Assembly (NCBI RefSeq): GCF_902459465.1
Contig: NC_047066.1
Coordinates: 19,468,001 to 19,532,000 of the forward strand
Direction of reading: 5' to 3'
DNA length: 64,000 nucleotides
Source: Asterias rubens
Taxonomy: Eukaryota
Shown here piece by piece: positions 363-36,692 of the stretch. A program made the translations under genes and the position numbers. How positions within the stretch are numbered: position 1 is the first letter of the stretch; each line of letters begins with the position of its first letter. Under the pieces are notes generated by a model, which made no database searches, was not told where the DNA came from, and was given only the letters and a program-made list of their open reading frames with translations.

Positions 363-1158
363 CTTGTGTCTTTTTAGTGGTCATCATTTTTTCATCATGA
401 CAATCGAAGTAATCGTGAATCTCTTCTACGTCTTGAGTGAACAGTGGTTGATCGGTGTAGTATTTTTCGTACGGTGTCTTCGTTGCCCTTGTGTTTACTC
501 CTCCTGCTAAGATGTTCGTACACGAGCAGCGTTCGTTTTTACTACCTACCATCACCCATTGGAGTTGATGTCCACGGCTAGGATTGGGCTCTTGAGCAAA
601 GTAACACACCTTTGCCGAGACTCCTGCATGTATTGTAAACAAATTTGCCAGCGTTAAAAATTTAAAAACCAAAACATGGGAAATTGTAGAAAACAATTCA
701 AACTGTTTTCTACAGAAAATTTCATGTTTTATACAATTATTATACACAGCCCATATTATTACAACAACGTATCAATGCGCTTATACATAAGTGCCCTTTG
801 CTCATTGGGCTAGTTTCATTCCTTTATTGTTTCTCAGCTCCCTTGTGAGTATACAACATTAAGCTGCCATAGTGTTCCAATTGTGTTTTCTTTTCAAACA
901 TAATTTAAACCCTACCCTCGCAGAGGTAGCCGTTTATACCAACTTGGTGCAGAGAAGCAATTATAGTGAAGTGTCTTGCTCAAGGACACATTAGTATCAT
1001 GACCCGGATTTAATAATGCACCAGCCACGAAACCCTTACATAAGAAACTGCCTTAAGATCGAGGGTATCTGCTCTTAGATACCAAAAATACAAATATTCT
1101 TAAAACGCTTACCTCCAATAAGTACCATCAGTGCCACTATAGAAAGAAAGCTGCACAT
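363..1158 (-). CDS. P1: FReD/discoidin-family paralog, 5' part only (exon 1 1113-1158, exon 2 363-623); remainder lies beyond the left edge
   Basis: Exon 1 MCSFLSIVALMVLIG with G|GTAAG donor. Exon 2 (261 nt, CAG acceptor, G|GTAAT donor) GVSAKVCYFAQEPNPSRGHQLQWVMVGSKNERCSC...[24 protein letters not shown] is homologous to exon 2 of P2-P6. Confidence 0.8.
930..1010. mobile_element. SINE-like fragment in P1 intron 1
   Basis: Contains AAGTGTCTTGCTCAAGGACACA, a motif I associate with widespread aquatic-animal SINE bodies; family not identified. Confidence 0.35.
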
Positions 1159-1263
1159 CTTCTTTACGGTCCCCAGTATTGCGCACAAGCAATGCATGTT
1201 CCTGTATATTGCCAAGCATATAGTGAACAAGAATATACTGAAATAGTGATTTTCGCCAACATC

Positions 1264-33787: not shown

Positions 33788-35954
33788 GGCGGTCTCACAT
33801 CCAATGGCAACTGATGGGTTTGTCACAGAGACAGGCAAGGACTGTCTCGTAAACTACCCTATGTTAATTTTACTTGCTACTCATACCATTTTGGTTAGTT
33901 TGACGGCCAATCAATACCACTCTGATTGAAAGTTGATGAGAAAAAAAGGAAGCAACTGAAGTGGAACACTTCACGCGTCTATCTGGTAGTTTCTTTAAAT
34001 CTCAATACCTGCAATACCGATGGCCAGCTTGAAAAAATATATTTTTTTGCTCTACATGTTAGTATAGCTTTATCTGTTTCATATGGAATGGAGAACGAAA
34101 TTGGTGACAATCATTTAGCGGCCTCGCTCGATAACCACCGATCTATACCATTTTAGTTATCTCACACTCTTCTCCACGCTCCAAAAAGGAAACGTTTCAT
34201 GTCAAACGATCTTCCTGTAATATTATGGCTTTAAAATACATCAAAGATATACATTTACGTATAAATATTCACTATTTTGAGGAATAAATCGTGAAACCTT
34301 TACGTAAAATGTATATGTTTCATGACCATTCAAAGCCACCATACTATTTATATAAACATCCACTTTCTTAAAATATTAACATTTTCAAGAAGAGACTCAA
34401 ACACAATTGTTCTTTCGCGATTTCTATTTAATTTGCTGGACGTGTGGTGTCGTAGTAGTTGAAAAAGGGTGATAGTGAATAATAACAATAAATACATATC
34501 AAGTCATAAACAGCAATAGTACAGAAAAGTATAAGGCTAATAGATTTGAACGATAGCACGATATAGTGAGAGAGCTTTCCATCCCACCCAATCAAAATGA
34601 TTAAAATAACAACCAAAGTACTGCGCTGTGTAAAACTGCTTTTGCAATCTGACTACCTATGCTCACTGCCCTCGAGTGTTGATCAGCCTTTATTAAAAAA
34701 AGGCCCGCATAGCCTGCAAATTGTTGATCACTTAAAAAACGGAAGTTGGGCATCTGCATAATATCTCCTCAATGTCACTATAGAGCCCGGACGCAAATGC
34801 ATTAAGCTCAAGCACAATGCTTACTTATTTCTGCTAACCACAGCAGGGCACCAGACTGTTTATTAGAAAATAATAATAATAACAATCGTTATCTGTTTCT
34901 GCTAAGCAACAAATTGTGGTGCCAAGTAATTTGTAAATGTACGATAATTCGGTCTTGCTGTGCTGCATTGCTTGTATGCTGAGATGAGGTGCAGCTACTA
35001 AAAGGCTGTGCAGGCGATCCTGGGGAACAACTCCCGTAAAATTGCACGACAGTAAAATTACTGAGTGTCTCCCGTTATCAAACCCTACGTCAGTCAATCG
35101 TGCTGTTTCGTCACATAACCAATATCACATAAATTTCAAATTAAAACTAACATGAGATCGGGTTATTATAAACACATGAGTTCTAAGAGTGCTTTCTATA
35201 ATGTTACGCAAATGTGGATGAATATATTTTACTAATTTAGAATAATAATATTTAGACAAAGATTTAATAGACTACACTTGAAATAACATTGCTAAATACC
35301 AAATTTACAAAGATACCAATAATATTTCATACGAAGCTATTGTAAGATATTAATGGAAATCACTCGACTCTGTTAAAAATGTTAAGTTAATCTTGCTAAG
35401 TTTTCGCCAAAAACTATCTTCAGGTGATGTCTAAACTATCTAATAAATCCCCTAAACTACATAATCATCTAAACAGTAAATATTTTACTTACAGTTTTAA
35501 CTGGTTCAGTTACGTTTGGTAACTAGTGTATTCATAACTTTTGTATAGTAAGAGGTTCAACAGCTTCGGGTAGTGTAATGTATTTTGAGAAACATTTTAA
35601 AACTGCAAAATGTCACATTTTCTCCCCAAAACTTTGAATATAAGAAGCATTGCCGCATTAACGTTTCTCTGATTGTGTTTTCCTATTAGGGATTAGTCTC
35701 CCTGCGTGGACATAATTATTATTCGCTCCGGAGTTTTGGCGATGTCTCAAAAACGCGACCAATGAAATTTTACATTTTAGTTTTAATGTAAACAACTATA
35801 GGCCTACATTTTCTCAAGCTGCTCCTATACTATCAAAGGCTGCTGTATGAGTGATGACCAAACGTACACATACATGTTTTATGTAGGTACTTTCCTTTAA
35901 TTTAGTGTATGCTGATGAAGTCGAAACTTATCTCTCTTTTCGGTAATCACTTAC

Positions 35955-36692
35955 CAGCCAGCCTGTTGTACCAATCATTTCACAGTAGACGTCCAAAAGC
36001 TTTTGGCTGTTTGGGAGCGAAACGGTGTAGACACCACTCTCAGTATTACCTGCATCCAGCAAAGCCTGGCAGTCCGCAGGTTTGTCATCTAAAATCCAAA
36101 ATGTGTGAAACATAGACTTATATTACACAATATAGCAACAAACAACAGCAACGCAATAACCGACAGCAGCAGCAGCAACAACAACAGCATCAACAATAAC
36201 AATAACATAACAAAAAGCTAAAAAACACGTGTCTACTGATCACATAAAAACAATACGTAGAGATAAACTATAAAAATGCCCCTTTTTGAGGAAGCAAACT
36301 GATATCAAGGTAAAGAAATATTGTTGCCTCAAAAGCTTTGGTTGAATGCACCTTAAAAGCTTTTTAGTAAATTAACTAATCTGCATAAAGTCTTTTTCGT
36401 TTTTGTTTTAACCTAAATTGGTACCAAACCGAATTGCTGTTTTATTGGCTGTTAAATACTCACAGTGACAATTAAAATAGTCGTTAATCATCTCAACTTC
36501 GTCAGTAAACAGTGGGTGATCGGTGCGATAGGGTTCGATTGGTCTCTTGTGTGCCATTTTATTTAGCCCCCCCTGGTAATATAACGGCACAGGAGCAGCG
36601 TTCCTCATGACTGCCCGGCATCACCCAGTGGAGTTTGCCTGCATGGTTCGACTCTTGCACGAAATAGCACGTCTTTGGTGATCCATTGACAA
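35955..36692 (-). pseudogene. P6: remnant paralog, only exon 2 (36425-36692, +1 frameshift) and exon 3 (35955-36088) found
   Basis: KTCYFVQESNHAGKLHWVMPGSHEERCSCAVILPGG, then a frame change at a 7-base homopolymer (36567-36573) into LNKMAHKRPIEPYRTDHPLFTDEVE. Exon 3 reads DDKPADCQALLDAGNTESGVY..VYCEM..TGWL. No exon 1 or exons 4-7 were seen nearby. Confidence 0.7.

What the first reader, a model, noticed from the sequence alone, without database searches (positions are those of the whole stretch)
363..36692. Tandem cluster of secreted lectin-like genes with a discoidin domain nested inside the fibrinogen domain
Seen: six minus-strand paralogs, the four complete ones sharing a 7-exon layout. 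The FReD runs through KYALSIG (exon 4), is interrupted by a full F5/8 type C domain (exons 5-6), and resumes at FESLNG..FST.DNDND (exon 7). The insert sits at the B-to-P subdomain junction where canonical FReDs have the YSG.AGDSL loop. Established: FReDs (ficolins, tachylectin-5, FREPs) and discoidin domains each bind glycans or membranes, and the F5/8C fold has adjacent, disulfide-linked termini. Both terminal Cys are present here, which makes insertion into a loop structurally plausible. Inference: an expanded, diversifying family of two-site pattern-recognition proteins. I know of end-to-end FReD fusions with collagen, coiled-coil, Ig and EGF domains but not this nested layout, and cannot confirm novelty without a search.
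Basis: partly seen in the sequence, partly recalled or inferred. Interest (0 to 1): 0.9.

Follow-up and report, generated by a model that had tools for sequence, protein, structure and literature searches.

The report
Sea-star fibrinogen lectins split by discoidin
A tandem cluster of sea-star (Asterias rubens) genes encodes secreted fibrinogen-type lectin-like proteins in which a whole discoidin domain has been dropped, as a two-exon cassette, into an intron in the middle of the fibrinogen domain, an undescribed nested layout that seems confined to sea stars.

Summary
The window is Asterias rubens. It carries six minus-strand paralogues: P1 (exons 1-2 only in the window), P2-P5 complete with 7 exons, and P6, a fragment. 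Pfam on single exons gives Fibrinogen_C 3-47 and 45-125, then F5_F8_type_C 1-82 and 85-127, then Fibrinogen_C 142-219. All splice sites are GT-AG and the phases fit. P2, P4 and P5 are intact. P3 has one in-frame TAA, and P6 is frameshifted and truncated.

RefSeq proteins of A. rubens and A. amurensis join the exons exactly this way. The nested layout, with 1, 2 or 4 discoidins, turned up only in sea stars (Asterias and Patiria miniata). Amphioxus and coral proteins have the two domains end to end.

A canonical Patiria paralogue has a phase-1 intron at exactly the insertion point. The origin is therefore exon shuffling of a phase 1-1 cassette into an existing intron.

dN/dS is 0.16-0.51 in every domain, which is purifying rather than diversifying; variation sits in the discoidin tip loops. 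Function (two-site recognition or adhesion protein) is inferred. Transcription of P2, P4 and P5 is unverified, and the P subdomain did not fold confidently. No paper describes this layout. The scan noted two similar loci elsewhere in this genome.

The parts
1113..1197 (-). P1 exon 1 (signal peptide), part of RefSeq LOC117290043 isoform X1
   Evidence: The peptide MHCLCAILGTVKKMCSFLSIVALMVLIG matches P0151 = XP_033627167.1 exactly. The donor is G|GTAAGC, phase 1.
363..623 (-). P1 exon 2 (N-terminal Cys domain). Exons 3-7 lie beyond the window start.
   Evidence: tblastn of P0151 residues 17-115 hits 660-364. The sequence is identical to P0151.
5985..10093 (-). P2, an intact 7-exon gene of 475 aa. 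Exons: 10093-10048, 9238-8984, 8685-8549, 7994-7733, 7346-7015, 6600-6462, 6241-5985.
   Evidence: Spliced model with all GT-AG sites. It is 93.5% identical to A. amurensis 'lactadherin-like' P0003. Pfam on exons.
7015..7346 (-). P2 exon 5, first discoidin exon (phase 1-0)
   Evidence: F5_F8_type_C profile 1-82, E 3.4e-15. Acceptor tttcag, donor GTGAGT.
6462..6600 (-). P2 exon 6, second discoidin exon (phase 0-1)
   Evidence: F5_F8_type_C profile 86-127, E 7.9e-8.
5985..6241 (-). P2 exon 7, FReD P subdomain plus the C-terminal strand
   Evidence: Fibrinogen_C profile 142-219, E 1.8e-16. The homologous P1 segment (P0151 402-481) aligns to tachylectin-5A 181-260.
11913..18903 (-). P3, 7 exons with one in-frame TAA at 13207-13209 in exon 5. 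Exons: 18903-18858, 17210-16959, 14492-14365, 14028-13770, 13514-13183, 12525-12387, 12166-11913.
   Evidence: RefSeq isoform X2 (P0183) uses P3 exons 1-4 and then the discoidin and P exons of P1.
22324..28328 (-). P4, an intact 7-exon gene of 473 aa. Exons: 28328-28280, 26153-25902, 25600-25473, 25252-24991, 24785-24451, 23151-23013, 22580-22324.
   Evidence: No matching annotated protein was found; the best is 77%.
29518..33787 (-). P5, an intact but divergent 7-exon gene of 482 aa. Exons: 33787-33742, 33449-33189, 32636-32518, 31858-31594, 31363-30999, 30188-30050, 29771-29518.
   Evidence: It is about 60% identical to the other copies. The exon 3 acceptor is shifted 9 nt. It has a Trp-Trp in tip loop 1, and the first Cys of the P-subdomain pair is lost (NLT in place of NCA).
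35940..36692 (-). P6, a gene fragment with exon 2 (about 36464-36692) and exon 3 (about 35940-36088) only
   Evidence: tblastn of P0151 and P0156. A run of 7 G at 36567-36573 shifts the frame relative to the paralogues. No exons 4-7 were found. The A. amurensis orthologue P0156 ends after the B subdomain.

Best explanation
These are members of a sea-star-specific family of secreted FReD proteins. Each has a short signal peptide, an unassigned Cys-containing N domain of about 85 aa, and a fibrinogen-related domain.

A complete discoidin (F5/8 type C) domain lies inside the loop joining the B and P subdomains, so one polypeptide reads A-B-[discoidin]-P.

The layout arose by exon shuffling. A two-exon discoidin cassette of phase 1-1 landed in the pre-existing phase-1 intron between the B exon and the P exon of a canonical FReD gene. 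The cassette was then multiplied inside that intron (1, 2 or 4 copies), and the genes multiplied in tandem, with gene conversion between copies.

The protein most likely acts as an extracellular recognition or adhesion molecule. It would combine a Ca-binding FReD P subdomain with a discoidin tip whose loops differ between paralogues.

Shown: the architecture, the gene structure, the recipient intron, the taxon range and purifying selection.

Inferred: secretion, ligand binding, and an immune or adhesive role.
For: - Split Pfam hits on single exons and on full proteins P0003, P0151 and P0215.
- Intact GT-AG models with compatible phases in P2, P4 and P5.
- Independent RefSeq models in A. rubens and A. 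amurensis join exons 4-5-6-7 in the same way. P2 is 93.5% identical to P0003.
- The discoidin exons have no start codon or signal peptide of their own and begin in phase 1, so they need upstream exons.
- dN/dS is 0.28-0.51 in the discoidin domain and 0.16-0.43 in the other domains, the short signal-peptide and linker segments aside.
- The discoidin part of the model has pLDDT 90-97. It matches neuropilin b1 and FVIII/lactadherin C2 with Z up to 26.8 and TM up to 0.92.
- The canonical Patiria paralogue P0300 has a phase-1 intron at ...GGDA|GDSL.... Its donor exon end, GAGATGCAG, is the same as in nested P0215. In P0215 the cassette sits between that donor and the GDSL exon.
- The intron positions (the B/discoidin and discoidin/P phases solved at 1 and 1; the Da/Db position placed from HSP ends only) are shared by Asterias and Patiria.
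- The Ca-site motif DNDND and the NC...C pair align to tachylectin-5A 198-219.
Against: - No transcript or protein data could be consulted. P2, P4 and P5 have no matching annotated protein in the searched collections, so their expression is unverified.
- Both AlphaFold runs left the P subdomain at pLDDT 36-59. It is therefore not shown that A-B and P reassemble a normal FReD around the insert.
- The AB tree puts the Patiria nested genes with Patiria canonical genes, not with the Asterias nested genes. A single origin therefore needs gene conversion. The discoidin tree is an unresolved asteroid clade.
- The positions aligned to tachylectin-5A Tyr210 and His220 are Val and Ala.
- P3 and P6 are broken.
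Confidence: 0.72

Rival explanations
1. The discoidin exons are a skippable cassette. Each gene would make both an ordinary ficolin-like FReD (exon 4 joined to exon 7) and the nested form, and in the multi-cassette genes a variable number of discoidins. On this reading the nested form is one isoform among several, not the fixed product.
For: The cassette is symmetric, phase 1-1. Skipping gives ...GIEPT-G-GVFESLNG..., whose B-to-P loop is as long as in canonical Patiria FReDs (by eye). At the A. rubens two-discoidin locus L003, intact exons orthologous to the first discoidin of the A. amurensis four-discoidin protein P0193 (16543-16884 and 17713-17853; 94% and 89% identity, no stops) are left out of both RefSeq isoforms.
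Against: No database protein of this cluster joins AB directly to P. The discoidin exons are under purifying selection. The L003 observation rests on gene models, and the first exon of the second cassette is missing there, so part of the difference is gene decay.
Confidence: 0.25
2. The nested layout is an artefact of gene models. On this view discoidin exons of a separate gene, or dead exons, happen to lie in an intron of a FReD gene.
For: RefSeq splits or merges some relatives oddly. P0221 is discoidin+P only, P0219 is AB only, and isoform X2 joins P3 to P1.
Against: - The same exon order and phases recur in four copies here, in A. amurensis and in Patiria.
- The discoidin exons lack a start codon and signal peptide.
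- They keep open frames with dN/dS below 0.51.
- No P exon follows exon 4 directly, so without read-through of the cassette region the FReD would need a splice of more than 1.4 kb anyway.
Confidence: 0.04
3. The window's copies P2, P4 and P5 are silent or decaying duplicates, and only P1 (LOC117290043) is a working gene.
For: No annotated protein matches P2, P4 or P5. Neighbours P3 and P6 are already broken.
Against: All three have intact 473-482 aa ORFs with consensus splice sites. dN/dS is well below 1 in all domains at dS of 0.1-1.2. P2 has an annotated orthologue 93.5% identical in A. amurensis.
Confidence: 0.12

Closest known systems
Canonical sea-star FReD genes with the same N domain (for example Patiria miniata P0300 'ficolin-3-like', P0295; Acanthaster planci P0309)
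   Same: They share the N-terminal Cys domain and the A, B and P subdomains. The A/B intron is phase 0 at GxI|VFQRR, and there is a phase-1 intron at the B/P junction. They fall in the same 99%-supported clade of AB subdomains.
   Different: They have no discoidin cassette in the B/P intron, and many carry tandem whole FReDs instead.
Ficolins, tachylectin-5A, FIBCD1 and other FReD lectins
   Same: Fibrinogen_C fold by sequence (E down to 4e-37 to ficolin-3, 5e-29 to tachylectin-5A). They share the DxDxD Ca motif, the Cys pairs, the NLNG motif and the C-terminal strand.
   Different: The FReD here is interrupted by 167 residues between tachylectin-5A positions about 168 and 181. There is no collagen or coiled-coil stalk. 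The positions of Tyr210 and His220 are not conserved.
Lactadherin (MFGE8), EDIL3, factor V/VIII C domains, neuropilin b1 (discoidin domains)
   Same: A full F5_F8_type_C match with the terminal disulfide Cys pair. The model matches with Z 25-27, rmsd 1.3-1.9 Å and about 30-34% identity.
   Different: There the domains are strung end to end. Here the domain sits inside another domain. The closest discoidins form an asteroid-specific clade.
End-to-end discoidin + FReD proteins of amphioxus and corals (Branchiostoma belcheri P0234 'ryncolin-1-like', B. lanceolatum P0214, Paramuricea P0268)
   Same: The same two Pfam families occur in one secreted protein.
   Different: The discoidin precedes an uninterrupted FReD (profile 2-221 in one stretch). 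They are not nested, and both the AB and discoidin domains fall in other clades.
Nested domains made by exon shuffling of phase 1-1 modules (general principle)
   Same: A symmetric phase-1 module sits in a phase-1 intron. The N and C termini of the inserted fold are adjacent (established knowledge for discoidin domains).
   Different: Here the recipient intron lies inside a globular domain, and the recipient intron is still visible in living paralogues.

Membership tests
Fibrinogen-related domain (Pfam PF00147) | Significant match to the Fibrinogen_C profile over subdomains A, B and P | tested here: met
   Exon hits cover profile 3-47, 45-125 and 142-219. Whole proteins score E 1e-47 to 4e-50, in two stretches.
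Fibrinogen-related domain (Pfam PF00147) | One contiguous domain of about 220 residues | tested here: not met
   It is split after profile position 125 by about 167 residues (linker, discoidin, linker).
Fibrinogen-related domain (Pfam PF00147) | Ca-binding DxDxD motif and the P-subdomain Cys pair | tested here: met
   YDNDNDN and NC...DDC align to tachylectin-5A IDKDHD and C206...C219. P5 lacks the first Cys. The two- and four-discoidin subfamily has HHHTD instead.
Fibrinogen-related domain (Pfam PF00147) | A-B and P segments fold together into one FReD | tested here: inconclusive
The P subdomain reaches only 36-59.
FReD lectins that bind acetyl groups (tachylectin-5A / ficolin type) | Acetyl pocket residues (Tyr210, His220, Tyr236 in tachylectin-5A numbering; their roles are recalled, not tested) | tested here: not met
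   The alignment gives Val, Ala and Phe/Tyr at these positions. Binding itself is not testable here.
F5/8 type C (discoidin) domain (Pfam PF00754) | Full-length profile match, terminal Cys pair and beta-barrel fold | tested here: met
   Profile 2-127 of 127, E 1e-25 to 6e-27. C...C is present in all copies. Z 26.8 and TM by target up to 0.92.
Ficolin | Collagen-like stalk N-terminal to the FReD | tested here: not met
   There is no PF01391 hit. An unassigned Cys domain with no Pfam hit takes its place.
Lactadherin / EDIL3 (the automatic names given) | EGF repeats followed by two tandem C-terminal discoidin domains | tested here: not met
   There is no EGF, and the single discoidin is flanked by FReD halves.
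Mollusc FREPs | IgSF domains upstream of the FReD | tested here: not met
   No Ig family was found in Pfam scans of P0003 or P0151.

The most novel reading that the evidence does not exclude
Sea stars use the FReD as a scaffold whose B/P loop carries a variable number (0, 1, 2 or 4) of discoidin modules. Because every cassette is phase 1-1, alternative splicing and exchange between tandem paralogues would produce a combinatorial repertoire of recognition proteins. This would be a lineage-specific route to immune or adhesive diversity, comparable in spirit to snail FREPs or urchin Sp185/333.
Probability: 0.15. Interest if true: 0.8.

Novelty: new variant of a known kind. Interest (0 to 1): 0.55.

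Why it matters
Both domains are classic recognition modules, but a discoidin nested inside a FReD is not described in any paper the searches reached. It also has no counterpart among AlphaFold DB fold clusters.

The case is unusually clean for protein evolution. The recipient intron, its phase and even its donor sequence survive in canonical paralogues. The step 'module shuffled into an intra-domain intron' can therefore be read directly.

For echinoderm biology it defines a sea-star-specific, tandemly expanded family of candidate immune or adhesive proteins. These proteins are currently mislabelled 'lactadherin-like' or 'coagulation factor VIII-like'.

For annotation, it explains why pipelines split or merge these genes.

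Tried and rejected
- MAFFT alignments that mixed whole canonical FReDs, or separate P-subdomain pieces plus AB pieces, with the nested proteins misplaced the P subdomain onto the discoidin or AB region (A2 and A3). They were not used for folding.
- Two AlphaFold runs (A4 and A6) did not resolve the P subdomain, so no statement is made on the geometry of the two sites.
- The ESM Atlas look-up of the N domain gave only low-recognition bacterial hypothetical clusters and was treated as chance.
- The AFDB cluster search found no protein aligning over both domains (TM by query at most 0.33).
- Literature searches on the accession numbers, on Asterias + fibrinogen + discoidin, on nested or inserted FReD, and on one A. 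rubens coelomocyte proteome paper found nothing relevant.
- A short exon 5 ending at ...WYY|GTTGGT was considered and rejected in favour of the downstream AAG|GTGAGT donor. That donor fits the Pfam profile, the FVIII C2 alignment and the RefSeq proteins.
- 'Diversifying selection' as a domain-wide statement was rejected.
- A single origin of the nested state could not be shown or excluded.
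Full report
**What is in the window.** The window is eukaryotic, about 37% GC and without N.

A tblastn with a full-length relative finds hits on the minus strand only. 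They group into six units.

The organism is Asterias rubens. RefSeq protein XP_033627167.1 (P0151, LOC117290043 isoform X1) matches exon 1 (1113-1197) and exon 2 (363-623) of the first unit exactly. Isoform X2 (P0183) matches exons 1-4 of the third unit.

**Check of the observation.** Stop-to-stop segments of P2 and P5 were scanned one by one against Pfam:

| Exon | Pfam family | Profile positions | E-value |
|---|---|---|---|
| 3 | Fibrinogen_C | 3-47 | |
| 4 | Fibrinogen_C | 45-125 | 1e-20 |
| 5 | F5_F8_type_C | 1-82 | 3e-15 |
| 6 | F5_F8_type_C | 85/86-127 | |
| 7 | Fibrinogen_C | 142-219 | 2e-16 |
| 2 | no family | | |

I then fixed the splice sites from the paralogue comparison.
- All four complete copies have seven exons, and every intron is GT-AG.
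- The phases are the same in every copy: exon 1 ends in phase 1, exon 2 is 1-1, exon 3 is 1-0, exon 4 is 0-1, exon 5 is 1-0, exon 6 is 0-1, and exon 7 starts in phase 1.
- P2 (475 aa), P4 (473 aa) and P5 (482 aa) are intact.
- P3 has a single TAA at 13207-13209 inside exon 5.
- P6 consists of exon 2, with a run of seven G at 36567-36573 that shifts the frame, and exon 3. No exons 4-7 were found.

The protein therefore reads: signal peptide, N domain, ...GWL|VFQRR...KYALSIGVSGIEPT-V-NGTC[discoidin]ELIGCK-G-GVFESLNGRTFSNYDNDNDN...MKMRRNK.

**Do real proteins look like this?** An exhaustive profile search with exon 4 and two word-based searches returned RefSeq proteins that join the exons exactly as modelled.
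- P0003, A. amurensis 'lactadherin-like', is 93.5% identical to P2.
- P0151 and P0183 are from A. rubens.
- P0184 is from A. amurensis.

Pfam on these whole proteins shows Fibrinogen_C in two stretches around a full F5_F8_type_C.

Domain mapping of all 401 fetched proteins found the order AB-D(n)-P with n = 1, 2 or 4. It occurs in A. rubens, in A. amurensis (more than 15 proteins) and in Patiria miniata (P0215, plus the partial P0299), and nowhere else.

Amphioxus and coral proteins that hold both families have them end to end, with an uninterrupted FReD (P0234, P0214, P0268).

The AlphaFold DB cluster search gave no hit covering both domains. Six literature searches and one paper look-up found no description of the layout.

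The scan itself has notes on two more such loci in this genome, which agrees with P0221 and P0153/P0186.

**Where exactly the insert sits.** Against tachylectin-5A (1JC9), P0151 residues 116-234 align to chain residues 45-168, and residues 402-481 align to 181-260. About 12 residues of the B-to-P loop are replaced by 167 residues.

In Patiria the sequence after the insert still reads GDSL, the motif that canonical FReDs carry at that place.

**How it arose.** I fetched the Patiria nested gene (L001) and a canonical paralogue from the same chromosome (P0300, L002).
- The canonical gene has a phase-1 intron at ...FIAEGGDA|GDSLSVH..., with the exon ending GAGATGCAG|gt.
- The nested gene has the same exon end, GAGATGCAG|gt, in phase 1. 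It is followed by two discoidin exons and then, again in phase 1, the exon that starts at the GDSL motif.
- The A/B intron (phase 0, before VFQRR) is shared between Patiria and Asterias, and so, judged from HSP ends only (no exact junction was solved in Patiria), is the position of the intron inside the discoidin domain (before (V/K/T)F.GN).

So a two-exon, phase 1-1 discoidin cassette lies in a pre-existing intron inside the FReD. This is exon shuffling in its textbook form, except that the recipient intron is inside a globular domain.

**Trees.**
- All these FReDs belong to one well-supported asteroid clade (99% SH-aLRT).
- All inserted discoidins belong to one asteroid discoidin clade (94%). 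That clade also holds discoidins of Acanthaster proteins without a FReD (P0155 N-D-D-D, P0307).
- The Patiria nested AB groups with Patiria canonical AB. This means either that the cassette entered twice or, as I think more likely given the shared site and the evidence for conversion below, that AB exons are homogenised within clusters. This is not settled.

**Selection and exchange between copies.** Pairwise Nei-Gojobori estimates per domain:

| Domain | dN/dS |
|---|---|
| N | 0.16-0.33 |
| AB | 0.26-0.38 |
| discoidin | 0.28-0.51 |
| P | 0.23-0.43 |

dS ranges from 0.1 to 1.2. That is purifying selection on all parts, including the insert, in P2, P4 and P5. It argues that they are, or recently were, working genes.

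It does not support 'diversifying' as a general label.

The differences and indels cluster in two loops, SVYKNELVYC / [15 protein letters not shown] and SYASGDGEW / NYHDLSYEGKDEW. These loops align to the segments holding Met2199-Phe2200 and Leu2251-Leu2252 of factor VIII C2. Those are the membrane-binding spikes (established knowledge). A site-wise test was not done.

dS is mosaic between exons. For P2-P3 it is 0.71 in N and 0.11 in P. For P3-P4 it is 0.11 in N and 0.54 in the discoidin. In the discoidin tree P3 groups with P1, while its N domain is 94% identical to that of P4. This points to gene conversion or unequal exchange within the cluster.

**Structure.** Two AlphaFold2 runs on P0151 were made with hand-assembled alignments (A4, A6).
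- The discoidin domain came out at pLDDT 90-97 and the AB part at 82-95 in the first run.
- The N domain came out at about 87-90 in the second run.
- The C-terminal strand reached 77-87. The loop-rich P subdomain reached only 36-59.
- The discoidin part matches neuropilin b1, factor V/VIII C2 and lactadherin C2 with Z 25-27.

That the two FReD halves reassemble is therefore likely from sequence conservation, but it is not shown.

**Likely function.** Inferred, not shown:
- The protein is probably secreted. It has a 15-16 residue hydrophobic N terminus ending in A or G and no later hydrophobic stretch.
- The FReD Ca motif and Cys pairs are kept, except that P5 has lost the first Cys of the P-subdomain pair.
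- The positions aligned to Tyr210 and His220 of tachylectin-5A are Val and Ala. The classical acetyl pocket may therefore be changed. The role of those residues is recalled from memory.
- The discoidin tip is where the paralogues differ. P5 carries a Trp-Trp there, a feature that in C2 domains goes with membrane insertion.

My best reading is an extracellular recognition or adhesion protein with two potential binding surfaces. Whether it serves immunity, clotting of coelomocytes or tube-foot adhesion cannot be told from here.

**Alternative splicing.** The cassette is symmetric. Skipping it would give a FReD with a loop of normal length.

At the A. rubens two-discoidin locus (L003), intact exons for a further discoidin (16543-16884 and 17713-17853) are present but left out of both RefSeq isoforms. 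They are 94% and 89% identical to the first discoidin of the A. amurensis four-discoidin orthologue P0193. The first exon of the second cassette is missing.

This makes a variable number of cassettes plausible, but it rests on gene models.

**Weak points.**
- No expression data could be consulted.
- P2, P4 and P5 have no annotated protein in the collections searched.
- RefSeq isoform X2 runs from P3 exon 4 to P1 exon 5, across all of P2. That is either a real read-through product or a model built to avoid the P3 stop.

**Verdict.** The finding is real, and the architecture is undescribed though present in databases under misleading automatic names. It is a new variant built from two well-known domains, with an unusually legible origin.

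Noticed in passing
window 11913-18903 and 363-1197: RefSeq isoform X2 of LOC117290043 (P0183) joins P3 exons 1-4 to the discoidin and P exons of P1. It skips P3's own exons 5-7 (exon 5 carries the TAA) and the whole of P2. This is either a chimeric gene model or a real inter-paralogue transcript.
   Followed up: partly
window 5985-33787: Synonymous divergence is mosaic between exons of the same paralogue pair (for example P2-P3 dS 0.71 in N and 0.11 in P). There are two types of exon 1: the MC.F...LMV.IGG type in P1 and P2, and the MD(I/F)L... type in P3-P5. This indicates gene conversion or exon exchange within the cluster.
   Followed up: partly
window 624-660: Directly upstream of P1 exon 2, in frame, the sequence reads ...LANLFTIHAG. 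This resembles the signal-peptide exon of P3-P5 (FLFTIHA), although P1 uses a different exon 1 about 500 bp further up. It may be a relic of an older first exon.
   Followed up: no
window 32518-32645: P5 lacks the usual exon 3 acceptor (ca instead of ag) and must use an AG 9 nt downstream. The phase is kept, and three residues (EHA) before the first FReD Cys are lost.
   Followed up: partly
window 8984-9238 (and exon 2 of every copy): The N domain of about 85 aa (C..E.....G..RWVMP....ERCSC...PGG...PY.P.YTDQPLF....E.I.DYF.C) has no Pfam hit. It is shared with canonical sea-star FReDs (Patiria P0300/P0005, Acanthaster P0309) and with an Acanthaster protein of N + three discoidins without a FReD (P0155). 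It folded at pLDDT about 87-90 in one model.
   Followed up: partly
L003:14022-38460 (A. rubens, another chromosome): The 'coagulation factor VIII-like' gene has, between its B and P exons, exons for four discoidin cassettes. RefSeq isoforms use only the last two. The first cassette is intact, and the second lacks its first exon.
   Followed up: partly
proteins P0153, P0087, P0113 (the two- and four-discoidin subfamily): In this subfamily the FReD Ca motif DNDND is replaced by HHHTD, and the loop before NLN is longer. The P subdomain there has probably lost Ca binding.
   Followed up: no
window 43797-45671, 55839-61648, 62246-62763: There are large tandem arrays: a 53-bp unit x 35 (96% matches, C-rich, creating a false 660-aa ORF), a 30-bp unit x about 196 (65-67% matches), and a 20-bp unit x 26. 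Smaller arrays lie at 51457-55033. No gene was seen in 37-64 kb.
   Followed up: partly
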